From Mytilus trossulus (lineage: Eukaryota): DNA of 64,000 nucleotides. How positions within the stretch are numbered: the first letter of the stretch is position 1; the number at the start of each line of letters is the position of its first letter. The DNA lies in contig NC_086376.1 in NCBI RefSeq assembly GCF_036588685.1, positions 45,446,001 to 45,510,000 on the forward strand, given 5' to 3'. A program made the position numbers and the translations under genes. Of this stretch, positions 1 to 49,433 are shown in pieces. The notes under the pieces were generated by a model, which saw only the letters and a program-made list of their open reading frames with translations, was not told where the DNA came from and did no database searches.

Positions 1-3000
1 TATAATAGTCTTCATCAGGTAGGCTGTATTAGCAGACTGTGCAACTTCCTTTTTATGAGTCTCTGTTATGTGGCTCGTGTATGGAGTTGGGTCTATGTTT
101 TCATCCTTCAATTAAATACTATATCTGTAATATTGGATACAATATTAGTTTCAGTTTCTTGAAGGATGTTTACCTCTTTGATACGATGCTACTGGTGCAA
201 TGAAAACTTGGCAAATACGTCACTAACAAAAATAGGTTTTAATAAAGTTTTATTTTACATCTGTCACATATACATTCATGATTTTTTATCAAATAAAAAC
301 ATTAATATAATTATTCCCCCTGTACATATTTCTTCAAAAAGAAGATTCATATAACTGCCAAAGTAATATTGGCGCTATCTTGTAGAGTACTTTCTAACAA
401 TTCGGTAGTATATAAGTACAATACATGTATTTTACCTAACAAGTTGAAAGGTATTTAAGTAAATCTACAATTTACCTACAGAGCATCAGAAGCCATGCGT
501 CTTTAAAATTAACTCAGAAAGGTTTCTCCAATAGTAAAAAAAAAATGATAAGGAAGCTGCATAACTTTGTCTCTTATATTTGGATGAAGAAATAAGTTCC
601 AAACTATAAACTTTTTTAAATTAATTTTCTATACTATTGTCTGTTTATTAAATTTGCATCTAATATCATTTCTGCACACACTTCTTGATTTTCAGTCAGA
701 TGCTGTTTTGTTTTCTTAACCGATCAGGGATATTTGTTTCATATGAATACTGGATAAAACTATAACGTTTGATTTATGAAAGTGAAAAATTTAAATAATA
801 CCATCGGAATCCCTTTTTCCCTATCCAATATAAGAGACAAAGTTACAATGTCTTGTTTTAGAATAACAATCAATAAACTACATGTAAATCTTGGAAACAG
901 ATCTATGGAAGATCTGATGTCATAAATTCTTATTGCTGATATTGCACTACAAATGAAAATCATTATCCCTTTGTTTTCTTACATTTCACATATATCAATA
1001 TGTATGTTAATACATTTTTGTATCTACAAAGAATAGTTACCGAGGATTTTTTCATCATTTCTTACATACTGATGAGAGGAAGGATAAATAATGCTATTAA
1101 AACATTGTCAATTATACAAATATTTTTAAAAGAATAGTGATTAATTACACGTAGAATTCTTCTTTTATCCTGTATCTAAACATTTGTTATCCTTAAAATA
1201 TCTAGATGAAATGGGATTTATTTACACGTAACAAACGTTTTATGGCTACTTTAATTTCTAAAATAGTACAAATAAATTCATTTACGTATTTTAAGCAATT
1301 TTTCAAAGTCATTTTGAAAAAGTGGCAAGATTTGGACACAGCAAGAAATGTATTTCCTTTCTTTATCAAGATAACAACCTTACATGGCACATTGCACATT
1401 CCTCGGGCACCGTTGAAGGTGGCGAGAGCTAAATAAGCTTTTGATAACAAAATCCTGATTAATGATAGACTAATGAATATAAGCTTTCCTCTGTCAATAT
1501 TGGGTGATATATTGAAAAGTCGTGGTTGTTATTGAACAACCGTTTGAATAGAATTGTCCCTACTAGCGTTCTTTGGTCTAGCATGAGGTTAAATCTATTT
1601 ACAGACTTTAATTTCCTTAAAGTTCATTGTATGAAAATAAAGTACCAACGTTTAAAGGGTCGACCTCTTATTGGATTTTATGGCTTAAGGTACAAATGAC
1701 TATATGACGTTTAAAATTGATTACTTTTCTCGTTCCTGGGCCTCCCATTTACTTACTTTGTAAAATAATTTCAATCAAAAAATATTTCCGGGTTTGCCTA
1801 TACGTTCCCTTTTAAGAAAAAGGGGAGGCAATTTCCTGCTACTGTTACTCTTTAAAAATGATATTTGCCATGGGTTTCTTTCAAAACCAACTATGCATAA
1901 TTAGATTTAATCTTTTCTATAAATGATGAAATGTCTAAAATTGGAAGGAAATAATAGCAACATAACATAGCCATTTGTGATAATGGTTCAACAAAACAAT
2001 TTCTAAAACCTGAAATTATGACCTTAAAAAAAATGAACAATTCTGTCAAACTACCCTAAAATATAAAATTTTAGAAAGCTGTATTATTTCGATAGGCCGA
2101 TAAATCTATTACAATATGACAAAAATCCTTCACTTCCGGACTTTGAAACATTATTTTTAAATAAAATAGTCGCTTAGAAAAGACTTTGAAAGGTATAGAT
2201 AAACAAGAATGTACCTGTAACCCTGTATCATGTATAGCTTATCACAGATTTCGAATAACAGAGACGAAACAGGTATATTGGCTAAAATATGGATATAATT
2301 AAGTAAAAAGCAAACATCGAACCGAATTTAAAAGACTATTGGGGGATTTACAACACTTAACGTTTTGGTAAAATATTCGTTGGAATCGTACAAAGATAAA
2401 ACACAGGTGGACCATTGACGAAATAGGACATAAGTCGCATTTCAATATTCAATCCAGGGTATGAAATAATCAAAATACTGCAAGTCATTTGATACAAATA
2501 AATAAAACATTGAAAAAATGATATTTTCAGATATGGATGTAGTACTTTAGTTCTCTTTCGATGTTTATTCAGTACTTACAATATTGTACCTAAAGATCTA
2601 GACATGAACAGTTTTATTCTTAAAGCATGTTTAATTGGGTATTGTGTTTGAATAATAAAAAACTGAAATTTTATTACTTGGACAATGTTGAAGTGGACAA
2701 ATTTTAGAAAGCCCATATAATTGAATTCCTTATTATTGGCTTTTCTGTAAATGTAAACATATTTGGCATTAAACCAAACCGATCAATTGGGAAATAGGAG
2801 CCCAAATGTGGACTATTGGTCTTAAGACGATCTGCAACAATGAGCAAATCCCATACCGTATAGTCATCTATTATATGTCCCGACATGTCAAAAAATGTGA
2901 AACAATTGGAATGAAGAAGAAAAAAACTACCCATGATTTTTGACAAAACAATTAAAGTTGGTTCAGATAGCATCAGTAAATTTACCGGAAAACACAATTG

Positions 3001-3650
3001 TAAAAAGAAGTTGACTGCAGGCGGACTCCAAACGATAGTTTAAACTATAACTATGAGACAGATGACCTCAAGTCACTGTTAATATTTCAAATTGTACCTG
3101 ATGAAGTAAACAGTTACAGTTTTGTTTATTTGTTGCTCGCTAAAAGGGGTAGTTTAACTTTCACTGTTTATAGTATTGTGTATTAATTTGGGGTCAAAGA
3201 TTTTAATCCAACTCCTTGGTGGCATGCTCGGTTAAGGAGGAAATATTCCTCTTAACTAATGAATATTGATGGCAGTGAATTAAATATACATCTCTCACAT
3301 ATACTGAAGAAATAAAATATAATGTACATCTCATAATAACACCAAGAACAATAAATACAAAGTGAGTTCATATGACCTTTACCTTAAAGGCTAACTTAAT
3401 AACTAACATGTCAACTTTTTTTACTGTCTTTCTCTCTGCTAGTCAAATACTATATTGCAATGTAGAAAGATCCAGCCAGTGTCCACATATAGCATTTTTA
3501 AGGAAAATCACGTGGTGTGCTGTGAACACATGGCACATGATAATGTTATTGCAACTTTGTTAATTAATTCCACCATCAATAGTTGACGGATCCGTTTCCA
3601 CATATAGCACTATATAGCCTTGTCATTGCAACGTTATATGAGATTCATAT

Positions 3651-3836
3651 TTACGATAAATTAGAATCAAGGTAGTCACTTAAATGATCGTTTAGTTTTC
3701 CGGAACTGTCTGACGTGTCTTCGTCTATATCCGAATTTCCTTCCATGTCCTCAACTTGCTCTTGTTTCTTTTTAGCTGTAGCCATTTCAGCAGCATGTTT
3801 CTTTCTCCATTTTGTGCGTCTGTTTTGAAACCACAC
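3651..3836 (-). CDS. Nkx6: Nkx6 coding exon 3 (helix 3 and acidic C-terminus)
   Basis: Acceptor TATTTTCAG|GTG, phase 0. Encodes [25 protein letters not shown] plus an acidic tail; stop TAA at 3653-3651. Spliced CDS is 795 nt = 264 aa, with the intron between homeodomain residues 46 and 47. Confidence 0.97.
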
Positions 3837-4254
3837 CTGAAAATATAAATTTTGAACATGAGAAAACGTATATTGTGACATAATTCAGAACTATAAAAAA
3901 AGAAATGAAGCAGGTACTCTTTATCAGTTGTTTTAAGTATAAAATCAGGGAGAATTAGTTTTATGTGACAATATGGCCTTTGTTTATTGTTGGTGATGGT
4001 CTGTGGTGACCATTATATAAAAAGATACGTTAATGTAGACTTTCGTTGTTGTTTTGCTGGGCATTGAAAGTTAACAACGATATATAAGTGCCGCAACACA
4101 ATGGCCACCATAAATAATTAAGAAAATCCGTTTTTTTTTTAAATAATTCACTGGTAGCTTCATACAATTTTATGAATTTACAGATAAGCATCACAACACA
4201 CACCAATTACATTTTTCAATAAAGAGGTTAATTCAGAAAAACGTATAATGTTCT

Positions 4255-4475
4255 CAACCACAAAAGTATAAAAACCATGCATCCAATTTTCTAAATCATA
4301 ATTTAATAGTACATATATGAGCCGTTCACTTTTTTAAACCACATAAGTACAGCATGAACAATTCATTTTTTTAACCACAAAAGTACAGCATGAATCATTC
4401 AATTTTCTCGAGCACAAGGTACAGACCTGAACCATCCAGTTTTTCATCACAAAAGTACAGATAGGAACCATTCAA
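4255..4475. repeat. Degenerate ~35-bp minisatellite
   Basis: Recurrent ACCACAAAAGTACAGCATGAAC.ATTCAATTTT units. Confidence 0.65.
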
Positions 4476-4559
4476 TTTACTTAACTTGGAAAATAACACT
4501 ACAGTAAAGTAGCCTGAAAACCATTGTAATAACTTGGTAATAAGATATAACAATATAAC

Positions 4560-4850
4560 AGTAAATAAACTCATCATAGATACCAGGACTAAATTTAGAA
4601 TACATGCCAGACGCGCGTTTCGTCTACAAAAGTCTCATCAGTGACGCTCGAATCCAAAAATGTTAAAAAGGCCAAATAAAGTACGAAGTTGAAGAGCATT
4701 GAGGACCAAAGTTCCATAAAGTTTTGCCAAGACAGCATCAAATACTTCCATGCATGTAGACTTCAAGAAACAAAAAAAATAAGCTAAGGGACTTCATCAT
4801 CAAGATTTCTGGAAATAGAGAAACTCTTTCGCCAATTCATTATTGTTATA
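4560..4850 (-). mobile_element. Fragment of the family 1 hammerhead-containing (retrozyme/PLE-like) repeat
   Basis: Shares body sequence (GTTGAAGAGCATTGAGGA, ACCAGGA flank) with copies at 37350-37770, 43650-43770 and 50440-51515. Confidence 0.8.
4604..4647 (-). ncRNA. Type I minimal hammerhead ribozyme (family 1), partly decayed, in Nkx6 intron 2
   Basis: Minus strand reads GCGUCA CUGAUGA GACU-UUUGU-AGAC GAAA C-GCGC-GUC^UGGCAU. Core is intact; one A.A mismatch in helix II and one C.A mismatch in helix I. Confidence 0.75.
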
Positions 4851-7800
4851 ATTAAGGCAACAGTTGAATATAGCCATTTACTTCGAGGAAATCACATTGT
4901 ATAGAGAAAGAACAACAACAGAACATTTTCTAATCAAAGGCAAACAATAGAACTGTACAGTCCCGACAAAATAAAAAAAATATAATGAGAGATAAAGAAA
5001 AAACTCAGTTGGAAAATCATCAGATTTGGGGCAGACATTTTTTATACACCAAGAGAAACAGCAAAACAGTATCCCCAAATTTTTTAACAAACAACGTTAC
5101 TGTAGTCAGGGGAAAAAAAACCATTTGCTACAGATAGACATACGATGCAACAGTGCCGTTAAAAAAAACTTCATATTTGTTTAGACAAGTATGGAAAGAC
5201 CTGGAAAATGGTAAATGGTAAAATATCACCTACAATATCTTTATAATTTAAGAGATTTTAAGGCTAGATCGTCTAAGCAATCCAATAAATCTATCTTTTT
5301 ATTCAAGACATCCAAATCATATTAGTCCTGATTCGTCTCTGATCAGGTTTTATACCAATACATCACGAATACAAACAAAGCTATAATTCTTAGTCAATAC
5401 AGTTATTTGTTGAATGTGTATCATTGGAACTTAAAATGAAATAAATTAAAATATATTTTGCAGATATAACTTCCACTGATTGTCTTTGTAAATAATAAAA
5501 GTTGATTTACATACAAATGAAACAGTTAAAATCTACAGATTGTTGACATAGAATTAATGTGATTGGTAATTGTGAATTGCTTTTTGACAAATTACTGATA
5601 AACTAAATGGTAAATTTCCTATAACAATGAATTGCATTTTTACAAGAATATACAAAATGGAGAGATTTTTTTTAAACTGTCGTGCTTTAAAAGTCCTAAT
5701 TTTAAGTGCAATTTTAAGTTCGTTTGCTAAGTCCTATTACTTCTATTTACAACATTTGACATTTTAATTTGAAAAAAGCAATAAAAGAAGTGCTTGTTAA
5801 AAACATTAACAAAATGGTTTACTTTTACAAATTGTGACTTGGATGGAGAGTTGTCTCATTAATTGGCACTCATACCATATCTTTTTATGTCTATTATCTG
5901 TATAAATTTCCAAAAACATAATTGCCAAATTGTAACTATGTTTTTTTGTTCCCGGTTACAAAATAACTATGCTCTTTCTCAGCTACAAACAAATCAGAGA
6001 GAACATATTAACAACGGTCGTTTGGTATATTCAAATATTGGCCACGAAGTATGTCTATTTCTTATTAATCAAAACAGCTTCAGTTCACGAAAACAAATTT
6101 GAAGGGACAATATCAAAACAAAAATGATAAAAAAATGTTTTAAATGAAATAACATGCAAATCAGTTTATTCTAAGGTTTTTATTGTCAAGAAAAATCGAA
6201 GAAACCGTTTCTATTTAAAAATACACACACAACAAAACCAACAAATGGCAAGAAAAGAAATGCAGGGAAACAGATAAAGAATAATTCATCTTTGCCACGA
6301 AAACTTCTTAATTTATATCCAAATGATATTTTACAATACCAAATGTTAATCCATATATTTTTTACATGGAACAAATAAAATAAACAGAACAAAAACAAAC
6401 GAACAAAGTTCAGTTATAAACTTCTCTAATATGAATCAAAACATGGTGTAATATTGCAAGAACCAAAGAAATTTATTGTGTTTATAGGAATATAATTAAT
6501 ACCAATGTGCGGCAAATTTGTAATTTAGCTATTTGATTCTATTATTTACAAATTATATTTCATCAGAAGTGAATTTCTTGTATATGTTTTTCAATAAAGA
6601 AACGATTTGTGTTTAATTCGGCACGATCCTTAGCGGTAACAGGTGTTAATAACTAGGAGAAATTCATCTTATATACTTTTGAACACAACTAATTATCCAT
6701 GCCAATGGCTTCTTCAAATATCTCGATATTTTGAAATAATTTTTTTTTTACAAAAGTCAGCAAGTTATGTTTCCAAGTAAGAAAAACAGTTAATTGTCTG
6801 TATTCTCTGAAGCAAAAAATATCGATTGGTGACGTGTACAATTAAAACTTTAGACGAATGAAGGCAATGACCAAAGGGTATTTCTAATTCATCATTTGAA
6901 ATCAAATATATGCTCAGTATATATGTATGTAGTTATAATACATTTGATTTTCGATGATATATTATTGGAAACACATCATTGGTTGAGAGTGATGAGTGCT
7001 GAGTTCTATGCATAATGTATTGTCATTGAGTTAAACGAGTTATCATATTCACGACGAGGACAGTCAGATACCCGCTAATGGTATATATAAATTTCTCAAA
7101 TATGTTCTTTAGATTCAAAAACACTACAGTAAAACCATTATGATTTACGGAATAATTAATTTTAATTGATTTAGAAACATGAATGTCCTGGAATTTATTC
7201 AAAACAAAAGGTATATGTATAGACCTAATGAATTTTATAGATTGCGTATAGCCTGCTCGAAACCATTTATGAATATATTTAGTAGAAAAAAGTACCAAAT
7301 TGAGAAATGAAAAATATAGTGCCATTGCAATGCCATCGTTGAAGCTATCAACTTTGCAAATTAAAATTGTAACGACCCGACAATTTATACCGAAATAATT
7401 TACTTCATACGGGAACCTGTCTAGTTTCATTTGACAGTGTATAAACCGAACTCTGAAAAAAAACAGAACAACCAATAAAAAAGTATAACAACGAATTTAA
7501 AGGATACTGATGAACAGATATAACATTTGATTTGACGAATCAAAACAGGACCATGTCTATATGTAAATAAGTGCACAACGCAAAAATGACACAGCATTTT
7601 AACCATGTATTGTTTACAATTCGAATGTTACTCTCACCAACGCTTCCAACAATGTGTTTGGTTCCCATCAAAAAGTTAAAAATACTTAATATACTACAAT
7701 TTTATTTTCAGACTTTGTTGCGCCACTGTCAAATAAAAGACAAAATGAATGCACTATAAACATACGCAGATTACACAGATATATAGGAATTACTTAAAAC

Positions 7801-10800
7801 TCCAGTTAATTGCAACTAAACATAACACCCAGTAAAGTTTTCATAGCCAAATTGTTGTTGAGTAGATTTATTCTTGTTTTGTTAAATAGATAGCGATGAT
7901 AATGACGATGTATGTACAGTTTGCGGAATAGTTTGGTCCAAACAGTGGAATAATAAAACATTTTCATCTATCTAGACGTCCCGTGTCGGCTCCGTGTACA
8001 GACTTTTTATATATATATGCGAGATAGTCATTAGTATATGATGTGCAAGGGGGATTTGTTTAATCTGTCATAATTGTTAAACAAATTAAAGAAGGTATGA
8101 TTTCCCGATGCTGACACAGTGCATGAGGAATTTCCTTCAAAACCTCCAGTCATCTTAGTATTACAACTATTACATGTACAATCTCTATTGATTTCAATTC
8201 ATTATGTTCATATATTTTGTGCTAGACTAAATATAACATGCGAGGGGTATTACAACTTCAGAAGTTTTAATTTTATGTGACAAATTATCATAAAACAAGC
8301 GCGCATTCCAACACTTTAGTACGAGCTTAATATGCCGTTAAAATTAGTTATATATTAAATGTATAACGGCATGAAATGGTATTTGAATAATTCACATAAC
8401 ATTGCAATTGGCTATGCAGAATACTATGACACATATGCACTAAACGAATCTATACCAAAAACTGCTTTGGATCGTTATTCGGGTGGTAAAAAGGCACCAA
8501 ATCGAAGACCAGACTAAATTTAGATAAAACGCAATCAAATTATGAAGCCCACATTAACAAAGAACTGATATCGCATTTCACTACAGCTTTAATAAGTAGG
8601 GTATTCAAGAATATCTTCCCATAAAACGGTTAGTGACGTCAAATGTATTGGACTTGACGTTGATATCTGACCTGAGTCAATTTTATAGATAGGGTGATTT
8701 AACCATGATATACCAACTGAAAATCGGGATTAGAAGAAAAATATAAAACTTAAAAGAAGTGGTATGGTGCATTTCGTATTATTGGCGATACGAGTGTTTA
8801 CTCTACGTTTATGCTCAAAGATAAGACCTTTTTTGTGTGCTTATATAAATATATAATAATTCCTTATTAGGTCGTACATTCGTCTGCCACAGGGAATAAA
8901 GATATATACAAATTCTTTCAGCGCTATAACTTAAAACTGACTGATAATTGTTTGTATTTATGTTCATCAGCCCGAATTAAGTGGTTTAATGGTGGTTTAT
9001 TAAAGTCCAAGACATTAAGCAAGCACTTTTCTAATTCCCATGAACTTTCAGGACATGGTGGTCTTCGACAATAATTTTGACAACTGAACCTATATATGGC
9101 AAGTATAAGACTCTCTCAAATGGTTTTGAGTAATGAAATTTTTTTTAAAAGATTATGATTATATAAAGTTTTTGTTAAATCATTGCGTCTGGTATATTTT
9201 GGGATAAATATCGATTCACCTATTTAGAGTATGAAGCAACACTTTATATTTCAGTTTGAAAGACGACGTTTAAGATATCGTCTTCTTAACTGAATTAAAA
9301 TTTTGAACACGTGCTTATCATTTTTTTTTTTATTATTGAACAAGATTGTGTGTTTTCTTTACTATATATGACGTGGCTGAAAAAAAATGCATTCACGGTT
9401 TTAAAATGAAAACAAAATATTTTTTTCGAACAAAATATTAGCTGTAGAAAAAAACCTGAGCAGATTTATATAGAAGTTCAAAAGGGTAAAAATTGCACTT
9501 TAAAAAATCCAAAAGTAAAGGGATTACTCAATGTACCGTTGTCAAAATCCATAATTGAAATTATAAAAATATCATGCACCTCACTGCATGTACCCGGATC
9601 AATTCAAGTTTTAAACGTTTTAAACTATTTTTTTCATTTAGCATTCATTTCATTTAACATCTGAATGATTTGATCGTCATAGGTTATTAAGTAGGAAAGC
9701 AGATTTTAGCCCACAAATGTTCATGAAGTTTATCCGTGCTTTTTGTTAACTTGAACATGGCATCTTAATTCTGACCTAAGCCGTGTCGTGGCTTTCATAT
9801 TTGTCGTAGGACCTCTCTGTGATCAACAATTACCTTTTTGCTAAATGGAGGAAATTTAATTAATAAAATATCAAACATAAATTGTTTGATCCTTCCTCTA
9901 TCATAAATGTTTCAATTTCTATTTCAAACGGCTAATTTATAGTTGCTTTTTGCCAAATTTCCATAATCCCTAAAAAGTCTAACGAATACAGAGGAAATTA
10001 ACAATCGATGTAAACAGATAAATAACTGGGCTGTAATGGACTCTCATTATCTCACGAAGACATTAAGCCTTTATAATTATATAAAATCTTCAGCATTATT
10101 GTTCTCTTCTCATACACCGTAAATGTTCAAACACGACCGTTCAATCTATTAACAGCCAAAGTCACAAAGGAACGAATTATGACGCAGCCAAGATAATGAT
10201 CCATGGAGATCGAACAATAAAAAGCCACTTGGCTGATTTGTAACTTTGCAGCTTCAGAAATTAATCCAATTCGAATGAACGATCATTTACCATAGAAATA
10301 TCCCATTTATTGAAATTCGCTAGTCGAATTTATTCAAACAGCTTACGTTTGGTGTGTTTGCTAATAATTCATCTTCTTTCGCTTTAATGGCTCTCCCCAC
10401 TTCATCACATAATTAAGAGACTATATATTCGATTGTTCCTAATGAAATTTCACACAATTCTTATATTAATTTCGTCTTCACTGTTCATGTTTAGTCAATC
10501 GACAGTTGCCCCTCTATTTTCATTAGTTTTTACGGTTAATTGCCCAAGCAAGATAGAAAAGTGACGAATTTAACCAAAGACCTTGCCTGACGCCTTTTTA
10601 TTTTCAGATTGGACTTTTCGTAAATTGATTTAGATGTTTTCTAGTTAATATTTCATACAAATGCACTTTTGTTTAAGCATAATAAGATGAATTAGTTAAG
10701 AGACAATTCGTGTAACCATGTTGTATGAATGTGTATATTAGTCAGAGAAAAAAAATCAAGTCACTTATAATTGAGTACACAAATACATTTTTCATTCTCA

Positions 10801-13509
10801 AAAAATTCTGTCATTATAATTTTAGAAAAAAACTCCTATAAAGTCTGGCTCTACTGTTAACATTTATAGCTTCAATGTACCACGTCGGTTTGTTCAATTT
10901 TTGTTTTATTGCACATTAAGACGAAGCTACTTCGGACGAATAAATAAACCTTAAAGTTTTATAGTGCAATTTTTACTATTATTCCATTTAATCTTAAACC
11001 GGATGGGTTTGGTGCATAATTTGTCCGAGAAAATGGCAAACGGATATGCCTTCTAATCCAGCCAAGCAACCTTAAATAGTGAATGAAATATTTAGAAGTA
11101 GAAATTTAGAAGTAGTAACTTCGCAAAAATTGTCGAACAATTAAGAGTTAATACCTTTCAATAAAAGTTTATTCTTATAGTATTTAGTGGTTTAAAATCT
11201 ATAGAATAGTACTAAATAGTTCATTTCAAGGGATAAAATGAAAAGAAATGTCAATTGTCGACGTACAAATGGCGCTTGGGCTTTGTGGTGTTTCAGACAT
11301 CTGTGTGATAAGTTTACAAACGCTTTGATGACCAAGTTTCCTTTAATCGTTCAAATTGATGCGAAAATGAAAGTAAATCTTGTGAGGATAACATAAACAT
11401 AAATTTTGTACTCAACATCAATCCTGTCAATAAATGTTATGACTATTAGTATGAAATATACCTATTGCAGATGTTACGGTGTCTTAAATTAGAATTGTTC
11501 ATTTTGAAATTTTCATATTTTCGCTTAAGGAATAATCCATGTAGAAAAGTTCTTTTGACAGATAATCATGTTTACTTTAACTGTGATATTAAATGTAATG
11601 TACAAAAGAGACCATTTCCACAAGTTCAACAAACAAATGCTGTTTTGTGCTTTTGTTCTATACTAATATCTTCCGCATGAACGAAAAGCCCGATGCTTTC
11701 ATAAAACAATAACCATTCTTTAAGTAAAATAAAGGAAAATGATTTAACTGGGCATTTCATTTCGCATGGATAAAAGATTTTTATTGGCCATAAATGAAGC
11801 ATTCAGACATTGTAAAAGGCTGATTGAAAACATTATTATTAGTAATTGTTTTCCTGATATGTATACATAGTCATCTAAGTGAACCCAATTGATGAATAAT
11901 AATATATATGTATATTATGCTAAATAAGATTTTTAAACTTATAAAAGGTTAATATTCGGACCCATGAAAGCCCTATTAAATTAGAAAATAATTCTGACAA
12001 TAAGGGCGAATTCCCAAATGCAAATCAGGACACCGGGTTTTGTTTTATTTTTATTTGGTGGACATGCCTCAAGAGTGCATATTGAATGCATATGAATTAA
12101 TACATTTTATTCTCTGTATATATTTCTAATTTTCTTTTTTTTGAAAGTGAAATAAGGCATGGTAACAGAAAACGGGGGCTAATAATCCCAAGAGATAACA
12201 TTTTCATTTGACCCTCAAATAAAAATTCAATTACATAATGAAAATCGATTTTAATTTACTGAAAAGAGCGATTATGAAATTTAACGATAACTATTTAAGA
12301 AATTGAACAATAGTTAAGGATACAGACATTAAAGAGTGATAACTAAATTAAATGAATCAAAGAAACCGCCTGTAGGTATGTAACGAGAGATTAAAGCTGT
12401 ACTTAAGATGTGGTGAAGGAATCAATGAGATTTTCAAAATCAAAGGATCACTTTCAGGTAATTGTCGAGGTATCATTTCCTCGTTTTTGGAATTTTATGT
12501 AATATTAACCCAACCCTCTTTGATAAGCTCAGGTGCTTACTTTCTGTTCAAAATAAATATTTCAGTCAATTATTTGACCGAAAGCCGGGTATCATTAAGA
12601 AAATTGATACTTGAAGATTTAAGTAAAAGAAAAATCCTACTTAAATTGTCTTTCCAATTTCTAAACTACTGCAGGCTTTATATATATATATATATAAATA
12701 TCATTTTAGGAACAATCAGGGTAAGAACATGTTTAAAAGAATAAGTTAATAAGTATCAAAATATTTATTTTAAGTTTGTTAAAATGTGAATCATACATTC
12801 GCACTCTTTGCGCCGGACATTGTATAACTTGTAATAACATTTCATTTTGTTTTTTATAAAAATTGCAAAATGCAAACGAATATATAAAATCAGAAACATT
12901 TTGACCAAAAAAAGAAGCGACAAATTCCTTAATTTTCTAGCAATAAATTCTGATATACATTAACTCTCACGTGTACATCAAGAAAAGATGAAGAAGTATT
13001 AATTGAGAATTATACCTCATCATCTTTTATAAACAAAAATAAACTTTCATTGATGTTCGTTCCTGTGTAAATAAAATAAGAAATTGACGGCTTTATCTTA
13101 ACGATTGTTTAACGGGAGCTGTCTCATAAAGTAAAATATAATGGACATTCGTTTGTAATTAAGACCATTTTGTTTAAGATCTGTTTAATGTTCTATCAAA
13201 TCTCTATTTTCTGCAATTAGAAGAAACGGAATTTCACGCCAAATTAATAAAGAAAAATATTCAAATATCTACCTTGGGATTAATTTAAAGAACTTTGAAC
13301 TCATTTAATTCTTTAGAAGATGGCGGTATTATATTTGAATATTGTACTTCTGTTAATGTGTGTTTGTCTATATCGATGTTCTTTTGATTTTTTGGGAAAT
13401 AATGAAGCCCCATCTTGGATGCAATAACAAGTTTATTCTTTATAGAACCTTCTTGAAAGTTAAGAATGTTAAAAAAAAACTAACCAAAAACGGACCTAAT
13501 GGTTTTACA

Positions 13510-13665
13510 CTAGTAATTTTTGGGCCCTTTATAGCCTGTTGTTCGGTGTGAGCCAAGGCTCCGTGTTGAAGTCCGTACATTGACCTATAATAGTTTACTT
13601 TTTTTAAATTGTTATTTGGATGGAGAGTTGTCTCATTGGCACTCACATCATATCTTCCTATATCT
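13510..13665 (+). repeat. Family A-related subfamily (ends GGATGGAGAGTTGTCTCATTGGCACTCACA..CTTCCTATATCT)
   Basis: Related copies at 5813-5892, 30850-30997, 32700-32802 (-) and 54147-54232 (-). Confidence 0.8.
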
Positions 13666-14364
13666 GTTAAAACTTAGAAGATATTTAACAATATTTCAAC
13701 AACAACAAAATTAAGCTCATAATTTTTTTCGTTACGACTTTTTTTTCTCTGTTGTCACAATTCTTTTGAAAAAATGAACGAATCAGCTGGACTATCAACT
13801 TTTATCGTCAAAAAGATTCGGCATAGGACACATATTATTTTCCCAATTACTCTTATTTGAGCACAACAAGTCTGCAATTTTGTGGAAGCATTTTTTGTTT
13901 ATATATATTCTCTTAAACGTACTGTCATGATCTTGTGTGCTGCTGCTGTTAACTCACATATACGTAATCAAATGTGAAGTCTTGTTTGAATCAATCATGA
14001 TTTATATTGGTCATGGAATTGCAAAAATCAAAAAAATATTTTGAAAATACTTGTCACTGGCTAAGAGCGATACTGTAGATCTATATTTACTTTTGTCTGA
14101 ATTCCATAATTATGAACCGAACCCAACCTACCAAAACTTATATCGTAATAAACTCTATATACGACTTTCTGTTTCAATATAATAAATTATTTTGCTTAAT
14201 CAAATTTTCAATCAACTATGGTCACATGTGCTAAGAATGGACTCTGGAAACTCTAGAAAGATTCATAGTTAGTTGAATTTAAGATGAAATGTTTGTATTT
14301 GTTAGTTTGTTTTTATTTTTTGGTGGTGGGGTATGATATACGATCAATTATATACATTGTATAT

Positions 14365-15284
14365 ATATAAACGAGTCTAAATTGAAAACTACGTTCAAAC
14401 CTATGACTGCGTTGGATAAAAACCGCAATTTTTATACGTGTGCATGTCAAACAAATTTCGTTGTAGAAGGGTCTAAAAACAGCACAAACAACATTTTCCA
14501 AAGGACCAAAAGAGTGAAAAAGTAAATTTAAACAAAACGCATTTGACTAACAGGTCGAACAACTGATGTTCTTTAACCCTGCTGACTGCCATTGGCGATT
14601 GCCAAATAAAATTGATCACAGGTTGTAACAAAATGGATCTTATTATAAATTTAATACGTCACAGAAAGAAAAAAAATTTGTTAACTTGTGGACAGGATGT
14701 TGTGCCACAAACATTCGGTGTCAATATTTCTTTAGTACACCATATCCGGATTTCGACAATAAATGTCTCTTCAGTGATGTTAGGGATCGAAACGGTATTT
14801 GGAAGGCCATATAAAAAGCACCCTCATTTTTAGAGAAAGTACCCTCATTTTTAGATTAACTCTTGAATTTTAAGAGTCAATATATAGGATGAACGGATCA
14901 TATAAACCGGAGGGAAAATATGATACATGCCCAAACAAAAAATATAAACGAGTCTAAATTGAAAACTACGTTCAAACCTATGACTGCGTTGGATAAAAAC
15001 CGCAATTTTTATACGTGTGCATGTCAAACAAATTTCGTTGTAGAAGGGTCTAAAAACAGCACAAACAACATTTTCCAAAAGACCAAAAGAGTGAAAAAGT
15101 ATATTTAAACAAAGCGCATTTGACTAACAGGTCGAACAACTGATGTTCTTTAACCCTGCTGACTGCCATTGGCGATTGCCAAATAAAATTGATCACAGGT
15201 TGTAACAAAATGGATCTTATTATAAATTTAATACGTCTCAGAAAAAAAAAAATTGTTAACTTGTGGACAGGATGTTGTGCCACA
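14365..15284 (-). mobile_element. Partial-tandem insertion: two ~345-bp near-identical direct repeats flanking a hammerhead-containing spacer (577-bp period)
   Basis: Repeats at about 14365-14709 and 14942-15284 differ by only a few bases. ACATTGTATATATATA is present at both 14354-14369 and 15282-15297 (TSD-like). Confidence 0.8.
14737..14780 (-). ncRNA. Type I minimal hammerhead ribozyme (family 2), all helices intact, in Nkx6 intron 2
   Basis: Minus strand reads ACAUCA CUGAAGA GACA-UUUAU-UGUC GAAA U-CCGG-AUA^UGGUGU. Helix I is 6 bp, helix II 4 bp, helix III is the palindrome AUCCGGAU, and the triplet is AUA. Confidence 0.8.
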
Positions 15285-16363
15285 TTGTATATATATATAT
15301 ATATGCTTGTTCGTGAATTTAAGTATCAAGTTCTAGAGATTTTAACTTCATGCATGGATGTAAATTGTAAATTATTCAAAAGAAAATCAAAATTTGTAAA
15401 CAAAAATGTAGAGTTTGATTTTCATTTATAGCATCGATTTTTGGCCAATATTATAAGTTTAATGAAAACTAAATAAACTAATTCCAAAGACTCTCTAAGC
15501 AATGAAACAATAGTTTCAAAGGGACACTACCAAAAAGCAAAGAAAGACTCACAACCAATTGTTGTGACTATCTCATAATATTAGATATTTATTATTTTTT
15601 AAAAAGGATTGCCTTAATGTTAATGATGCATCAACATACAAGCTGTGTTTTCACTTTTATCTTTCCTCTTCAACGCCCATTCCCTCACTGTCGCACAACT
15701 CTTTCATGAAAATCTGCGACATCAGATTAAGCAATCAACGGTCCCCGCAGGTGCACCATGGGAATTGAATTTATCAGGCAACATCCGTGACGACATAATG
15801 AGATGAAATTAACGACCAATACAATTATCCGTTATATCAGCCGTTAGATCAAGCGCTAAATGATGCGTTCACAAACCAAGATTTATTGAATTAACAAAAG
15901 AGGCTTATTTAGAATATTTCTTATAATTAGATAAGTCTTAAGTACCTGTGGATAAGGGGATATAAATCACTTAAGCTATTGTCATCTTTGTTAACCAAGA
16001 TATACGATAGCAGTAGGTGGTATCTGAAAACGATTCGAGACCGTAGCGTGTCATGTTAACATGATATGTGGCTGTTCAGATATTGTAGCGATATTACTAG
16101 TTGAACACTGTAACATAGATTATGGGGTGTTTTTTTAGCAAGGTTCTTTGGGAGTGGGGAGTCGGTTCTTTATGACAACTGACAGTTTCTCAGTCGAAAC
16201 GTTATAATTACAAAGTCTTAAAAAATTATGAAGCATAGCCCACCAGATTCTAAGATTGACTGATCTTTTGCTTCTGCTGAAACCTGATATAATATAAAAT
16301 AAAATAAAACATGAAAAAAATAGTTTTTAACACAGTCTCCCTCCAAAGTATATCCGACGCTTA

Positions 16364-16780
<417 letters not shown>

Positions 16781-19042: not shown

Positions 19043-19147
19043 TTGCCATGGCATAAGTATTTTGTTTTTTGCCATGACATAAGTAGTTTGTTTTTTGCCA
19101 TGGCATAAGTAGTTTGTTTTTTTGCCATGGCATAAGTAGTTTGTTTT
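19043..19147. repeat. Tandem repeat, 4 x 26-27 bp (TTGCCATGGCATAAGTAGTTTGTTTT)
   Basis: Seen directly; a local amplification inside a family E-like remnant. Confidence 0.9.
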
Positions 19148-20877: not shown

Positions 20878-21316
20878 CTGAAGCTCTCCAAGGATTTGGT
20901 CCATTAAATATTCCGGGCCAGTATATAGGAGGTCTGCCTGGAAGTTCTGCAAGTTTAGGAAATCTAGCTCTAGGGTTTAAATACATTCCTGCAGCATTGA
21001 AACCCGCTAGTCCAAGCGGTCTACCCAAAATGTCATTTATACCGTGAGGAGTACCGTTGTTAAAAGCATGTTTCCAAGCAGCTGACGCCGATTGATTTTG
21101 TGAAAAAAAGTTTGAAGATGATGAAACTGGTGTCTTCATTTCTGTCATATTATGTAAAGCAGCTAGCGGTGGACTACTTAGAACAAAAGCGGACTGTCTA
21201 GAATTTTCCATCGCCACATTTCCATTCATATTTAGAATGGAAGCCATACTAGGACTAGAGTTTGCTTGGTAAGCAGCGTTTCCGTTAGTGTCATTCATAA
21301 AGCTATCCAACAACAT
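20878..21316 (-). CDS. Nkx6: Nkx6 homeobox gene, coding exon 1 (N-terminus with eh1/TN Groucho-binding motif)
   Basis: ATG at 21316. Translation contains [23 protein letters not shown] (eh1) and [17 protein letters not shown], motifs typical of the Nkx6 family. Donor TCAG|GTAAAA after 20878; 439 nt, phase 1. Confidence 0.95.
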
Positions 21317-36900: not shown

Positions 36901-37386
36901 TTAGATGTTAAAAAAAAGTAAAGCAAAAATACAGTACTCAAAGGTAATTCAAAAATGAGAAAGCCACTATAACTAAAAAATTCAAGCACGAGGCCTTATT
37001 GTATTGTTTGTCGTATTGTAGACCAGTCATGTAATTTTTTTCATTGTACTGCTATATTTAACATTGTAATAAAAGCGGGAGGTTTGGCAAAACACAACAC
37101 CAGGTTCGACCCACCATTTTTTCTCTAAATGTCCTGTACCAAGTCAGGAAAATTTCCATTGTTAAATTAAAGTGCGTTTCTGTGTGTGTTACATTTAAGT
37201 GTTGTGTTTTTGTTGTGTCGTAATTCTCCTGCTGTTATATTTGATGTGTTTCCGTCAGTTTTAGTTTGTAACATGGATTTTCTCAATCGATTTATGAATT
37301 TCGAATAGCGGTATACTTTTACCTTTATTTATTTATATATGTTTGTTTGAAACAGTTATCAAAGTTACCAGGATTATAATTTAGTA

Positions 37387-37428
37387 CGTCAGACGCGCGT
37401 TTCGTCTACATAAGACTCATCAGTGACG
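37387..37428 (-). ncRNA. Type I minimal hammerhead ribozyme (family 1), intact
   Basis: CGUCA CUGAUGA GUCU-UAUGU-AGAC GAAA C-GCGC-GUC^UGACG. Perfect 5-bp helix I, 4-bp helix II and palindromic helix III ACGCGCGU. Confidence 0.88.
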
Positions 37429-37721
37429 ATCATGCCAAAATATTCATAAAGCCAAACCAGTACAAAGTTGAAGAGCATTGAGGATCCAAAATTCCAAAAA
37501 AGTTGTGCCAAAAACGGCAAAGGTAATCTATGCCTGGGATAAGAAAATCTAAGTTTTCTAAACTGCTAATTTATAAAAATTACCACATTATTAATATTCA
37601 TGTCAACACCGAAGTGTTGACTACTGGGCTGGTGATACCCTCGGGACGAAATGTCCACCAGCAGTGGCATCGACCCAGTGGTGTAAATAGTTTTCAAAGG
37701 TACAAGGATTCTAATTTAGTA

Positions 37722-37763
37722 CGTTAGACGCGCGTTTCGTCTATATAAGACTCATCAGTGACC
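37722..37763 (-). ncRNA. Second hammerhead of the tandem unit; core intact, helix I damaged
   Basis: GGUCA CUGAUGA GUCU-UAUAU-AGAC GAAA CGCGC GUC^UAACG, located 335 bp from the 37387 copy. Confidence 0.7.
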
Positions 37764-38184
37764 CTCATATTATTTGAAAATTGATAATACTTTAATACAA
37801 AATATTAACAAACACTTAGATATGGTTAATGCAAAAAATGTTCTAAAATTGAATGGCGTAACGGATGCCTTCTCATATTGGGTTAAATGTGTATTGTTAT
37901 TCGTATGAATTGTTGTTAAACACATCCTCCGTTATTCCAAGCTGGTTAAGAACATATTTTATATATATTTAGAAACATATCACAAATAAATATGCGTATT
38001 TGAATACCAGTTTGATAATTTCTTTATTTGATAAACACTATTCAACTTAATGTACATATAGATGATGAATGATTTTACATTCAAGTTACAGCTTACTACC
38101 ATTACCTTTACTTATAACATTCTGAACCCAGTTTTGCAAGGTAGGTTTTGACTTAGATATATCTTAAGTAGGTTTTTTTAGAGC

Positions 38185-41214: not shown

Positions 41215-41580
41215 AAAAATCACCAAAGATACCAGGCGTACATTTTTTTATGTCAGACGCGCGTTTCGTCAACAAAAGACGCGTCCTTGACACTTGAATA
41301 AAAAAAAAGTCAAGTAGAATACGAAGTTGAAGAGCATCGAGGGCCAAAAAAGGGTATGCGAAATATGAATAAGGTAATACACTCCTGTGGTAGATAATCA
41401 ATTATATTTCGAACAAATCAGTTTTCTAAATAGCTAATTTATAAATATGACAGTACAAATGATAATTGATGTCAACGTGAATGGCTAGCTACTGGGCTGG
41501 TGGCATTGGCAACTACCTAATGGTTGCAAAAACATTTCATCAAATATATCAGGCTTATAATTTTGTATCCAAGTCACGCG
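41215..41580 (-). mobile_element. Decayed family 1 retrozyme unit (catalytic core lost)
   Basis: TCAGACGCGCGTTTCGTC at 41253-41270 and GTTGAAGAGCA / CTACTGGGCTGGTG body motifs; CUGAUGA is replaced. Confidence 0.65.
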
Positions 41581-43017: not shown

Positions 43018-43698
43018 ACATACTTAGTATTTATTGAATCATATTATTTTTATACAAAAAAATCACTTTCTTTGAAGAAGTGACAAATTATATTTACCAA
43101 AAGCTTAAGAACAACCAAAAAATTTATTAAAACTGACCACATATTGACGTTTATTTTAAATTGACAACATTTGTGTTACTAGTACCTTTGATGAATGTAT
43201 TATTTATCAGTAAGTCGACATTCCTAAGGGAACCAATCGTGTTTTCCTCTTGCAATTTTGTTACTTTTATTCGTATATAGTATATATGAGCTACTGGTAT
43301 ACAATATTAACTTTTAACCTTAAACGTTACATTACGAATTATAAGTGACGTCCTTTTTTAATTGTTTAATCATAATTTAGTGGACCATTGTGGTAAAAAA
43401 TACATGTTGCAGATGAGGAATAAGTATAAGTTCCACTTGTCGTTATCACAACTATCGGGAAATAAGCAGGATTAGTAAAGGCAACACAACGGATGTCGCT
43501 ATAGCTCAATAGAATCTGTTTATCCTTCATTATTATCTTAGGTTTGGTTAATGTTGCTCAATCGTTTGGTTTCGGTGAAAAATTGTGTTTAGGTTTTCTT
43601 CGACTCTGGCTTTTTAATTCGCAATTAATATATTCTTTCCTCTTTTATAATGCTCTTCAACTTTGTATTTGTTTGGCATTTTAACTGTTTTGATCTGA

Positions 43699-43742
43699 GC
43701 GTCACTGATGAGTCTTATGTAGACGAAACGCGCGTCTGGCGT
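43699..43742 (+). ncRNA. Type I minimal hammerhead ribozyme (family 1), intact
   Basis: GCGUCA CUGAUGA GUCU-UAUGU-AGAC GAAA C-GCGC-GUC^UGGCGU, with cleavage predicted after 43736. Embedded in the family 1 repeat body (about 43650-43770). Confidence 0.9.
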
Positions 43743-46100
43743 ATTAAATTATAATCCTGGTACCTTTGATAACTAATTATAGCTGATATAAACCAACATT
43801 TAATTGGATATACTACCCTTGGGGATAAACATAGCAGTGACGTACACCCAGTGGTTGTAAATAAACTCATTATAGATATCAGAATTAGAATTTTGTTCTT
43901 CCTAAGATTCATGACTTTATTATCTTTGTATTGATAAAAAAAAAAATTTAAATCTCGTACTCTTCAGTCTTTAAAATAACAAACAAAAAATGAACACTGA
44001 AAAACATTCTAAACGGAAAGTCGCTAAGAAAAAGGTAAAATCAAAAGCCTAAACACATCAAAAGAATTGATAACAGCAGTCATATTTCAGACTTGGTCGG
44101 GTATTTTCTTATAAAGAAAATGATGGATTAAATCTGATTTTATAGCTAGCCAAACTTCTCACTTGTATGACAATCGCATAAAACTCAATCATACTGACAA
44201 CGATGTGTCAACAAAACAAACAGACATAATTTTGTAAAAATGTCGAAAGTTGGGGTGCATCAGTCAGTATCAGTCAGCATTGTGTTATAATCGTAATCAC
44301 TATAAAAAAAAATCAAATATGTTAAAAAAGGTAAACAAAAAGGAACATAGACAAAGCACATTAGCAAAAACGAAAGACAAGAATACACAAATTACCCTAG
44401 CACACTGATACAATTATTTTGAATTGATAATATTTTTTGTTTCTTTTTTTTTAAAGTTTCATAATCGTGATTTTTTCCCCCGTGTATCATCCTTAAAAAA
44501 TATTACACTTTTGAACAGCCAATAATTTGAAAAGAAGCACTCTGGTCTTTTCTTCATGTGATATTTTTTTTATAAAGAATTATGTAGACTACCCATGTAT
44601 TGTCAAAGTGTAGACAATATATATTAATTTGTTTCTACTGTTGTTCGTGTTAATTTTGAGGTTTTCCTAAAATGAATTATTACAATATTATCTGCATACT
44701 GCTTATGCAAATGTATGTATTGCGATTACAATTAATAAAAGCAAGGAAGTTTGCATTTTAAATATAAAAACTCAAATATGCTGTGAATATACGACTAGTG
44801 CAGGGTCAAGTGAAATAAGTCAAACTTAACTTTTTTGGTGCAAATAATTCTACGGTTAAGATTTAATTATCTCAAAATACGTATACATCAATGGCAACTA
44901 GTTTAGAAAATATTTTAAAAGAGGTTTTTAAAATGTTACGTACTCTCATGGAGTACAATTCAAAAGGTACAAAACAATTTAAACGTTGGATGCACTCTAA
45001 CAATTGGGGGAAATGCCTCATAAATAGTGGCCATAAATCAATGGATTAGCGAACAAATCTATAGAGGCACATTATTGATGGTAAAAGCTTTTTATTTGGA
45101 AATTGGTTGCTTTAAATGCGTTATATTAAGTATTGAAATGGGTTAATATAGGATAACGCTTCTGAATTTGATTTAATTTGGTCGCATGAAGCAAAATTTC
45201 TTTTGATGTGACAATATAACGTACCAATAGTTTAATATTACATTACTAACCGCTTGGTAAATCCAATAACTTTGTCAAACTCCTAAAATAATCCAACATC
45301 AATTTTGAATACGCTTAGCATTAAAACTGTTTTATTTTGTATTTAAATACATCATGTATAAAGGCTGACAGAAAAAAGGTTAGACGTTTTAGTTACAACA
45401 GGAATTCTTGATTATTCTGAAAAAAAAATAAAAAATAAGTCTGATCATGAAACATTGACATGCTCAGTAAAATTGAAGTATTTTCAATCATTTTTCATAC
45501 GAAGCTTATTTTAATCAATAACAATGTTTCAAAGAAATGACATAGATATATACCATACATAAAAGACAGAAATCCCCATCAATTATTAACAGAAGAATCG
45601 CTGAAAAAGGGACAATGGCAGGCAAATCGAAAGATTCATAGTTTATCTTTAATGTATTTCAAAAGCTATATTAAAATGTAAATTTTGTGTAAATTTATTT
45701 AGACAAATTTTGTACCTGCGTCGCAAAAGCAAAAGCAGGCCTAGTAACAGCCCAATTCCATCCGTCTGTTCGTCCGTCTGAAAGTTGTATCCTGTAAGTA
45801 TGTTACTGTTTGCAGACAGTATGAAATTTTATACTCTCATTGTACTTTTGTGTATCTTTTCTTGACTTCTATGGAAGGGAATTATAAGTTTACATGTTAC
45901 CTCAATTAAGTTCTTGTGGAAATGGTTTGTTATATTCCATTACTGGTTTGGCTTTTTTTTTTTAATATAGAATGCATATTAATAAACAAATAGAATATCT
46001 ATCTTAAATGTGTAAAGATAGTATCTGAAGATTTTAAAATATTGTTACATGTATATAGAAAAGCAATTAAAGAATAACGGTTGATCAGATCAAGATTTAT

Positions 46101-49400: not shown

Positions 49401-49433
49401 TTAAAATGGCATATGCCAAGTTAGTAAAATGGC

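What the first reader, a model, noticed from the sequence alone, without database searches (positions are those of the whole stretch)
4604..14780. Two sense-oriented hammerhead ribozymes inside intron 2 of the Nkx6 pre-mRNA
Seen: both intronic hammerheads (4604-4647, family 1; 14737-14780, family 2) are on the minus strand, the strand transcribed as Nkx6 pre-mRNA. They lie about 770 nt before the exon 3 acceptor and about 1.7 kb after the exon 2 donor. The family 2 copy has every helix intact. Established: minimal type I hammerheads with a tiny palindromic helix III, as found in Penelope-like elements and non-LTR retrozymes, cleave poorly as monomers and efficiently as dimers. Inference: the two copies carry different palindromes (ACGCGCGU vs AUCCGGAU) and should not pair with each other. 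Each could instead be switched on in trans by a retrozyme RNA of its own family, cutting the pre-mRNA between the two halves of the homeodomain. That would let a mobile RNA modulate a developmental regulator.
Basis: partly seen in the sequence, partly recalled or inferred. Interest (0 to 1): 0.8.

Follow-up and report, generated by a model that had tools for sequence, protein, structure and literature searches.

The report
Retrozyme hammerheads in mussel Nkx6 intron
Two hammerhead ribozyme motifs do lie in the sense strand of the intron that splits the homeodomain of a mussel Nkx6 gene, but they are ordinary copies of two very abundant mobile elements (retrozymes), one of them decayed, and nothing shows that they regulate the gene.

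Summary
Both motifs, their strand, their cut sites (4610/4609 and 14743/14742) and the Nkx6 gene model check out.

- **Site 1 (4604-4647)** lies in a 170-nt fragment of the published Mytilus galloprovincialis non-LTR retrozyme. It has mismatches in helix I and helix II and scores below Rfam's threshold.
- **Site 2 (14737-14780)** is an intact hammerhead that Rfam does not report. It is supported by compensatory changes in all three helices across three families. It lies in a young, 5'-truncated 1.59-unit insertion of a 577-nt tandem retrozyme, with an 8-bp target duplication in a (TA)n tract.
- **Abundance:** the genome holds about 20,200 family-1 and 2,900-3,700 family-2 cores. Sense intronic copies are therefore expected by the hundreds. 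The scan already holds at least 19 sense and 11 antisense intronic hammerhead notes on other DNA of this genome.

In silico, site 2 and a cognate RNA form a perfect double hammerhead. Family-2 RNA is expressed, mostly on the ribozyme-sense strand. No read covers the Nkx6 intron or exon 2, and no excess of RNA ends lies at the cut site.

The premise that both motifs need dimers is contradicted for family 1 by published single-motif cleavage. Trans-activation remains untested speculation. Verdict: ordinary.

The parts
4604..4647 (-). Site 1: family-1 type I hammerhead motif. Predicted cut is between 4610 and 4609. Helix II has an A.A mismatch and helix I a C/A mismatch.
   Evidence: (RF00163 26.8 bits, below GA 34).
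4561..4730 (-). Fragment of about 170 nt (about 0.48 unit) of the 354-nt Mytilus non-LTR retrozyme (family 1). It spans the hammerhead.
   Evidence: BLAST to a 354-nt array unit of the same genome, 82.6% identity. Best genomic copies are 91-95% identical. By eye it is near-identical to the published M. galloprovincialis retrozyme clone and consensus.
14737..14780 (-). Site 2: family-2 type I hammerhead motif (CUGAAGA core, helix III AUCCGGAU, A17). Predicted cut is between 14743 and 14742. All helices are intact.
   Evidence: Rfam gives no hit.
14365..15284 (-). Young 1.59-unit, 5'-truncated insertion of the 577-nt family-2 tandem retrozyme. On the + strand it reads A (14365-14709), B (14710-14941, with the hammerhead), A (14942-15284). 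It carries only one hammerhead.
   Evidence: 99% identical to more than 200 genomic units; fixed 3' end, variable 5' end.
14357..14364 (.). Target-site duplication TTGTATAT, left copy, at the edge of a TA-rich tract.
15285..15292 (.). Target-site duplication TTGTATAT, right copy, followed by (TA)n.
3837..16519 (-). Nkx6 intron 2 (12,683 nt, GT..AG). It splits the homeodomain after Pfam Homeodomain profile position 45 of 57 (...SQVK | VWFQNRR...).
16520..16689 (-). Nkx6 exon 2 (first part of the homeodomain).
   Evidence: PF00046 positions 1-45/57, E 3.8e-11.
3651..3836 (-). Nkx6 exon 3 coding part plus stop codon ([24 protein letters not shown]...).
20878..21316 (-). Nkx6 exon 1 coding part (ATG at 21316, [12 protein letters not shown] motif, donor CAG|GTAAAA).
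   Evidence: (99% identical to Mytilus Nkx-6.2-like, 264 aa).

Best explanation
Two independent retrotransposon insertions landed, by chance in the sense orientation, in the long second intron of a Mytilus Nkx6 gene.

**Site 1** is an old, truncated, mutated fragment of the known mussel non-LTR retrozyme. Its ribozyme is most likely dead.

**Site 2** is a recent insertion of an abundant 577-nt hammerhead-bearing tandem element. It has the family's fixed 3' end and a variable 5' truncation, and it sits in a (TA)n tract with a target duplication. This footprint fits target-primed reverse transcription of a multimeric or circular template. The truncation at 1.59 units leaves one intact hammerhead and no cis partner.

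Both are passengers of the intron, with no evolved role in Nkx6 regulation. If site 2 cuts at all, the simplest route is slow cleavage in cis, or chance pairing with abundant family RNA. Either would be a mild cost to the gene, not a switch.

**Shown:** the identity, structure, age and abundance of the elements, and expression of family-2 RNA. **Inferred:** the lack of function at this locus.
For: - **Family 1 is the published retrozyme.** The flanks and ribozyme match the M. galloprovincialis clone and consensus in the supplement of PMC7229834.
- **Site 1 is a fragment.** It covers unit positions 236-398 of a dimer of the 354-nt unit. It has two helix-breaking substitutions.
- **Family 2 is abundant and young.** It has a 577-nt unit in long arrays at 99% identity. 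The window copy has an 8-bp TSD. In 4 of 4 short arrays the 3' end lies at the same unit coordinate next to (TA)n, with variable 5' ends.
- **Genome counts.** There are 20,209 family-1 cores, 3,677 family-2 cores at <=2 mismatches and 2,857 exact. Reversed-pattern controls give 0. I clustered the listed places by eye. That gives roughly 6-8 family-1 loci and 1 family-2 locus per Mb, so about 4-5% and 0.6% of 12.7-kb segments would carry a sense copy.
- **Intronic copies are common elsewhere.** A 2026 preprint finds 42-44% of Xenopus retrozyme copies in introns. The scan holds at least 19 sense and at least 11 antisense intronic hammerhead notes in this genome (unverified).
- **No transcript evidence at the locus.** No RNA read lies on the unique intron or exon 2 in two raw RNA runs.
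Against: - Site 2 is fully intact. Its palindrome is predicted to be mostly unpaired in its intron context (P unpaired 0.65).
- The double hammerhead with a cognate RNA is the minimum-energy dimer.
- Cognate RNA is expressed, mostly on the ribozyme-sense strand. Cleavage of the pre-mRNA is therefore physically possible.
- Absence of function is inferred, not shown. No Nkx6-expressing tissue was sampled.
- No genome-wide orientation test was possible without gene annotation.
Confidence: 0.8

Rival explanations
1. Each intronic hammerhead is silent alone and is switched on in trans by a retrozyme RNA of its own family. The two form a double hammerhead that cuts the Nkx6 pre-mRNA inside intron 2, so a mobile RNA modulates Nkx6.
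For: - Site 2 with a cognate RNA forms a perfect double hammerhead as the MFE (-24.7 vs -16.2 kcal/mol).
- The helix III palindrome is kept through a compensated double change: AUCCGGAU in 2,857 copies, AUGCGCAU in 77, uncompensated forms in 13. Pair 3-6 cannot form in a monomer hairpin.
- Family-2 RNA is expressed at depth 250-500 in 6% of a run, mainly on the sense strand.
- The palindrome is accessible in its intron context.
Against: - Site 1 pairs poorly with an intact partner: -18.7 against -27.8 kcal/mol for other dimers.
- Family 1 cleaves as a single motif in vitro (PMC7229834), so no partner is required for that family.
- In a trans dimer the intron is only a roughly 15-nt substrate, held by 6 bp of helix I and the 8-bp helix III. 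From general knowledge of minimal trans hammerheads, such short arms work poorly at cellular Mg2+. Minimal Penelope-type motifs show low activity even as dimers (PMC4209133).
- The insertion is very young and typical of about 1,000 or more loci.
- Partner RNA has not been shown in nuclei of Nkx6-expressing cells.
- No excess of molecule ends lies at 14742/14743, even in family RNA.
Confidence: 0.04
2. Site 2 self-cleaves in cis as a single motif at a slow constitutive rate, as the family-1 mussel ribozyme does in vitro. That would lower or leave unchanged the Nkx6 mRNA yield of this allele: a mildly deleterious or tolerated side effect, not regulation.
For: - Helix III of site 2 (2 bp plus a palindromic tetraloop) is of the invertebrate type that PMC7229834 reports as active in single motifs (mussel about 0.1 per min, coral about 0.8 per min).
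- 10,906 nt of intron follow the cut site. By my inference this gives minutes for cleavage before the acceptor is transcribed.
- The intronic CPEB3 ribozyme is a precedent for competition between cleavage and splicing (PMC10274809 abstract).
Against: - The monomer MFE of site 2 is not the hammerhead fold.
- Its A-U/U-A helix III stem is weaker than the A-U/C-G stem of family 1.
- Family-2 RNA reads run through the cut site without an excess of ends.
- No kinetic data exist for this family.
Confidence: 0.15

Closest known systems
Mytilus galloprovincialis non-LTR retrozyme (Cervera & de la Pena 2020, NAR, PMC7229834)
   Same: Site 1 and its flanks match the published clone and consensus almost base for base. 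The genome holds 354-nt tandem arrays with the same hammerhead. The paper reports about 5,000 copies, 350-390-bp repeats and abundant circular RNAs.
   Different: The Nkx6 copy is a solo fragment of about 0.48 unit. It has substitutions that break one pair in helix II and one in helix I, so it cannot release a monomer or a circle.
Minimal and palindromic type I hammerheads of Penelope-like elements that act as dimers (PMC4209133; Forster et al. 1988 and Lunse et al. 2017, both as cited in PMC7761336)
   Same: Site 2 has a short palindromic helix III. It folds in silico into a double hammerhead with a second copy. Its family inserts with a fixed 3' end and variable 5' truncation into (TA)n. Earlier follow-ups in this scan read that as a Penelope-like signature.
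   Different: Site 2 keeps a 2-bp stem plus tetraloop, whereas min-HHRs lack any helix III. It sits in a 577-nt non-coding tandem unit, not in the flanking repeat of a coding element. Dimer dependence of this family is untested.
Conserved intronic self-cleaving ribozymes of amniotes (HH9/HH10 hammerheads, de la Pena & Garcia-Robles 2010, as cited in PMC7229834 and PMC7761336; the CPEB3 HDV-like ribozyme, PMC10274809)
   Same: A self-cleaving motif in the sense strand of an intron of a protein-coding gene, where cleavage could compete with splicing.
   Different: Those are single-copy and conserved at orthologous positions over long times. The two motifs here are copies of families with thousands of members. 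One is decayed and the other is about 99% identical to its relatives, so it is recent.

Membership tests
Hammerhead ribozyme, type I (Rfam RF00163, clan CL00010) | Invariant core: C3 U4 G5 A6 N7 G8 A9, G12 A13 A14, A15.1-U16.1, H17 at the cut site | tested here: met
   Read directly in both motifs. Site 1 has CUGAUGA..GAA..A..U-C. Site 2 has CUGAAGA..GAA..A..U-A.
Hammerhead ribozyme, type I (Rfam RF00163, clan CL00010) | Three helices around the core, with helix I open (both ends in helix I) | tested here: met
   Site 2 has 6-bp helix I, 4-bp helix II and a helix III palindrome, all pairs standard. Site 1 meets this only in part: it has an A.A in helix II and a C/A in helix I.
Hammerhead ribozyme, type I (Rfam RF00163, clan CL00010) | Score at or above Rfam's gathering threshold (34 bits) | tested here: not met
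   Site 1 scores 26.8 bits. Site 2 gets no hammerhead hit, even at E<=10 on 221 nt. Intact family-1 copies in the window also fall just short, at 30.5-33 bits.
Hammerhead ribozyme, type I (Rfam RF00163, clan CL00010) | Helices supported by compensatory changes | tested here: met
   On 10 motifs of three families, 93.6% of cells are paired and 5 pairs changed on both sides (1 in helix I, 2 in helix II, 2 in helix III). Slid controls give 11-45%. Few independent lineages are involved.
Hammerhead ribozyme, type I (Rfam RF00163, clan CL00010) | Site-specific self-cleavage | not testable with these tools
   No excess of molecule ends at 14742/14743 in family-2 RNA reads. Religated circles or uncut multimers would look the same.
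Non-LTR retrozyme (animal) | Short non-coding tandem repeats, one type I hammerhead per unit | tested here: met
   Met at family level: 354-nt arrays and 577-nt arrays. Not met at this locus: site 1 is 0.48 unit, and site 2 is 1.59 units with a single hammerhead.
Non-LTR retrozyme (animal) | Expression as linear and circular RNA | tested here: inconclusive
   Family-2 RNA is present and strand-biased in raw reads (X21), and in RNA contigs identical to the window (X15). Reads crossing the unit junction fit tandem or circular RNA and cannot tell them apart. Circles of family 1 are published (PMC7229834).
Non-LTR retrozyme (animal) | Retrotransposition footprint (target duplication longer than 4 bp) | tested here: met
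   8-bp TTGTATAT duplication. Fixed 3' end and variable 5' end in 4 of 4 short arrays.
Functional (domesticated) intronic ribozyme | Conserved at the orthologous intron position across species | not testable with these tools
DNA contigs of a related organism do not cover the junction at 15279-15315. The 99% identity to other copies argues for a recent insertion.
Functional (domesticated) intronic ribozyme | Single-copy motif, not a member of a dispersed repeat family | tested here: not met
   20,209 family-1 cores and 2,857-3,677 family-2 cores in the genome.

The most novel reading that the evidence does not exclude
Abundant sense-strand family-2 retrozyme RNA pairs in trans with the single intact hammerhead at 14737-14780 and cuts the Nkx6 pre-mRNA. 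The partner supplies the catalytic core and the intron supplies the substrate half. Retrozyme load would then tune the output of a developmental homeobox gene.
Probability: 0.03. Interest if true: 0.8.

Novelty: new member of a known kind. Interest (0 to 1): 0.22.

Why it matters
As it stands, the finding is another locus where known kinds of hammerhead-bearing retroelements sit in an intron.

It would matter if trans cleavage occurred. That would be a natural case of a mobile RNA acting as a trans ribozyme on a host pre-mRNA. Because the substrate half is only about 15 nt, thousands of host transcripts could then be targets.

Two by-products are of modest use:
- A well-defined young 577-nt retrozyme family with a clean insertion footprint. 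Rfam's hammerhead models miss its ribozyme.
- A compensated change that keeps the helix III palindrome. This is indirect support for dimeric action.

Tried and rejected
- **Rfam at gathering thresholds:** no hit in the window. At the E-value threshold only family 1 was found. Site 2 was missed even on 221 nt, so its identity rests on the core, the helices and covariation.
- **Orthologous intron in other Mytilus species:** Not done.
- **Insertion polymorphism:** DNA contigs of a related organism (X12) cover the unique intron at about 95% identity but not the junction at 15279-15315. Unresolved.
- **Pre-mRNA cleavage:** two raw RNA runs have zero reads on the unique intron or exon 2. No test was possible.
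- **Stretch choice for read laying:** I did not lay a stretch spanning both junctions. It holds a 345-nt internal repeat, which the tool says it turns away.
- **Rod-like structure of the family-2 unit:** weak signal only (z -1.8; 4 of 100 shuffles as good).
- **Genome-wide orientation bias:** rejected as not doable without gene annotation. The counts of scan notes (19 sense, 11 antisense) reflect readers' attention, not a sample.
- **Typing the published clone into a tool:** not done. I compared it by eye and used an array unit of the same genome instead.
- **Joined exon model:** the three exon pieces were searched apart and never joined. Only their lengths were summed.
- **Papers not held:** Lunse 2017 and de la Pena & Garcia-Robles 2010 are not in the library. 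They are cited only through papers that cite them.
Full report
**Observation**

Both motifs are in the sequence as described.
- On the minus strand, 4647->4604 reads GCGUCA CUGAUGA GACUUUUGUAGAC GAA ACGCGCGU C|UGGCAU.
- On the minus strand, 14780->14737 reads ACAUCA CUGAAGA GACAUUUAUUGUC GAA AUCCGGAU A|UGGUGU.
- The predicted cuts are at 4610/4609 and 14743/14742.

Rfam finds nothing at its gathering thresholds. At the E-value threshold Hammerhead_1 (RF00163) reports site 1 at 26.8 bits, below the gathering score of 34. It also reports three better family-1 copies at 37386, 37721 and 43699 (30.5-33 bits). Site 2 gets no hammerhead hit, even when only 221 nt are searched at E<=10.

A loose core pattern occurs 12 times in the window against 3.1 expected. 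None of 100 shuffles reached 12.

**Host gene**

The gene lies on the minus strand.
- Exon 1 coding part runs 21316->20878 and carries the [12 protein letters not shown] motif. Its donor is CAG|GTAAAA.
- Exon 2 runs 16689->16520, with acceptor TTTGTAG|GC and donor CAAG|GTAAGA.
- Exon 3 runs 3836->3654 after TTTTCAG and begins [10 protein letters not shown].

I searched the pieces apart and did not join them.
- Exon 2 matches Pfam Homeodomain positions 1-45 of 57, E 3.8e-11.
- The exon-1 ORF is 99% identical to a 264-aa 'homeobox protein Nkx-6.2-like' of Mytilus.
- The three coding pieces add up to 264 codons.

Intron 2 is 16519..3837, 12,683 nt, and splits the homeodomain. Site 2 starts 1,739 nt after the donor and site 1 ends 767 nt before the acceptor.

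**Site 1**

The 170 nt at 4561-4730 are a fragment of a 354-nt tandem unit (positions 236-398 of a dimer query). That unit forms long arrays in this genome.

The fragment and its ribozyme match the cloned M. galloprovincialis retrozyme and its consensus, printed in the supplement of Cervera & de la Pena 2020, almost base for base (PMC7229834; compared by eye).

That paper reports the following for mussels:
- About 5,000 hammerheads in repeats of 350-390 bp.
- Self-cleavage of a single-motif construct during transcription, at kobs about 0.1 per min.
- Circular RNAs at high levels in gonad and mantle.

The Nkx6 copy differs from intact copies by a change that makes an A.A in the 4-bp helix II and a change that makes a C/A in helix I. 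Its best genomic relatives are 91-95% identical. It is an old, truncated, probably dead copy.

**Site 2**

The hammerhead lies in the unique part B (14710-14941) between two copies of a 345-nt repeat A (14365-14709 and 14942-15284; 98% identical). A plus B is a 577-nt unit. More than 200 scored genomic units are 99% identical to it, most of them in long arrays.

The window copy is a 1.59-unit insertion flanked by an 8-bp duplication, TTGTATAT, in a TA-rich tract.

In all four short arrays whose two ends I could see (the window, L002, L009, L010):
- the sense 3' end lies at the same unit coordinate (...TAGACTCGTTTATAT) next to (TA)n;
- the 5' end varies, at unit coordinates 233, 342, 334 and 437.

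This is the footprint of target-primed reverse transcription of a multimeric or circular template with 5' truncation. It agrees with earlier follow-ups of this scan on the same family elsewhere in the genome (s1-820613, s1-820543). Because of the truncation, this copy carries one hammerhead and has no partner in cis.

**Is site 2 a real hammerhead?**

All invariant core positions are present and all helices pair. I aligned ten motifs of three families:
- family 1;
- family 2;
- a third family of about 348-nt units, which is about 70% like family 1 but carries a family-2-type ribozyme.

On this alignment 93.6% of cells are paired. Five pairs are changed on both sides: one in helix I, two in helix II and two in helix III. 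Slid controls give 11-45%.

Genome-wide, helix III reads AUCCGGAU 2,857 times and AUGCGCAU 77 times. The two uncompensated forms together occur only 13 times. Pair 3-6 of this palindrome would leave a 2-nt loop in a monomer hairpin. Its compensated change is therefore indirect support for an intermolecular helix III. It probably reflects a single evolutionary event.

**Abundance and chance**

The genome is 1.30 Gb. It holds 20,209 family-1 cores and 3,677 family-2 cores at <=2 mismatches. Reversed-pattern controls give 0.

I clustered the listed places by eye. This gives roughly 6-8 family-1 loci per Mb and about 1 family-2 locus per Mb. About 4-5% and 0.6% of 12.7-kb segments would then carry a sense copy. 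Sense intronic hammerheads are expected in the hundreds to thousands.

Two of two in sense orientation has a probability of 1 in 4.

In Xenopus, 42-44% of retrozyme copies lie in introns (bioRxiv 10.64898/2026.07.22.740005).

The scan's own unverified notes list at least 19 sense and at least 11 antisense intronic hammerheads in this genome.

**Mechanism**

ViennaRNA gives the classical double hammerhead as the minimum-energy homodimer of site 2: -24.7 against -16.2 kcal/mol for two monomers. The same holds for intact family-1 motifs.

| Dimer | Double-hammerhead energy (kcal/mol) | Comparison |
|---|---|---|
| site 2 x cognate | -24.7 | equals the MFE dimer |
| site 1 x intact family-1 | -18.7 | MFE dimer is -27.8 |
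| site 1 x site 2 | +6.4 | no cross-pairing |

In that topology, helix I of each active site joins the 5' strand of one RNA to the 3' strand of the other. Each RNA is therefore cut by the partner's core.

In a 1.1-kb intron context the site-2 palindrome is mostly unpaired (P 0.65).

The premise that such motifs cleave poorly alone holds for amphibian retrozymes and for minimal Penelope motifs (PMC7229834; PMC4209133). It does not hold for the mussel family-1 ribozyme. The same authors describe invertebrate motifs with a 2-bp helix III plus tetraloop as active singly.

**RNA evidence**

I laid four runs on 14700-16700.

In raw reads of a related organism (X21; about 6% of the run read):
- The family-2 unit has depth 250-500 with the first mate on +, against 12-90 on -. 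In most stranded libraries this means RNA of the minus strand, which is the ribozyme-sense strand. The library type is not known to me.
- Many reads match only 14738-14779 with other flanks and carry the family-3 changes.

An RNA contig of a metatranscriptome (X15) is identical to 14700-14841.

No place at 14742/14743 reaches the tool's threshold for many molecule ends. Depth on 15303-16700 is zero in all three RNA runs. Cognate RNA exists, but Nkx6 is not expressed in these samples, so cleavage of its pre-mRNA was not tested.

DNA contigs of the related organism cover the unique intron at about 95% identity but not the insertion junction. Presence or absence of the insertion there is open.

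**Conclusion**

The finding is a correct observation of two ordinary retroelement copies.
- Family 1 is already known.
- Family 2, and the third family, are further members of the known retrozyme kind.
- Trans-activation is physically conceivable for site 2 only. It has no evidence here, and I put it at about 3-4%.
- Slow cis cleavage as a tolerated side effect is somewhat more likely, at about 15%.
- The remainder is inert passengers.

This prevented the orthologous-intron comparison.

Noticed in passing
L032:360-2154 (G000:C14:43942400-43944900); reads at window 14738-14779: A third hammerhead family. Its units of about 348 nt are about 70% similar to the family-1 unit but carry a family-2-type ribozyme with helix III AUGCGCAU and C17. 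It has 77 exact cores in the genome. It supplies many, and in run X24 most, of the RNA reads that touch the site-2 hammerhead. It looks like modular exchange of ribozyme and body between retrozyme families.
   Followed up: partly
window 37350-37770 (-): A complete family-1 retrozyme unit bounded by two hammerheads 335 nt apart (37386-37429 and 37721-37764). It lies upstream of Nkx6 and is 89% identical to a 354-nt array unit.
   Followed up: partly
window 41224-41502, 43649-43779, 49164-51504, 53779-53961: A cluster of at least eight further family-1 fragments on both strands, 70-94% identical to the unit, in the region upstream of Nkx6. Only 43699-43742 keeps a good hammerhead (33 bits).
   Followed up: partly
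window 14365-15284; L002, L009, L010: Family-2 insertions end at one fixed unit coordinate next to (TA)n microsatellites and have variable 5' ends. Family-2 RNA in run X21 is strongly strand-biased.
   Followed up: yes
window 4338-4478: A 36-nt tandem repeat (3.9 copies, 76% matches) lies about 80 nt beyond the family-1 fragment's lower coordinate (4561), on the acceptor side. I did not work out whether it belongs to the element.
   Followed up: no
window 19043-19147: A 26/53-nt tandem repeat (4 copies, 93% matches) inside Nkx6 intron 1.
   Followed up: no
window 14737-14780: Rfam 15 hammerhead models do not report this well-supported hammerhead, although about 2,900 identical cores exist in the genome. 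This is a blind spot for CUGAAGA/AUCCGGAU-type motifs.
   Followed up: yes
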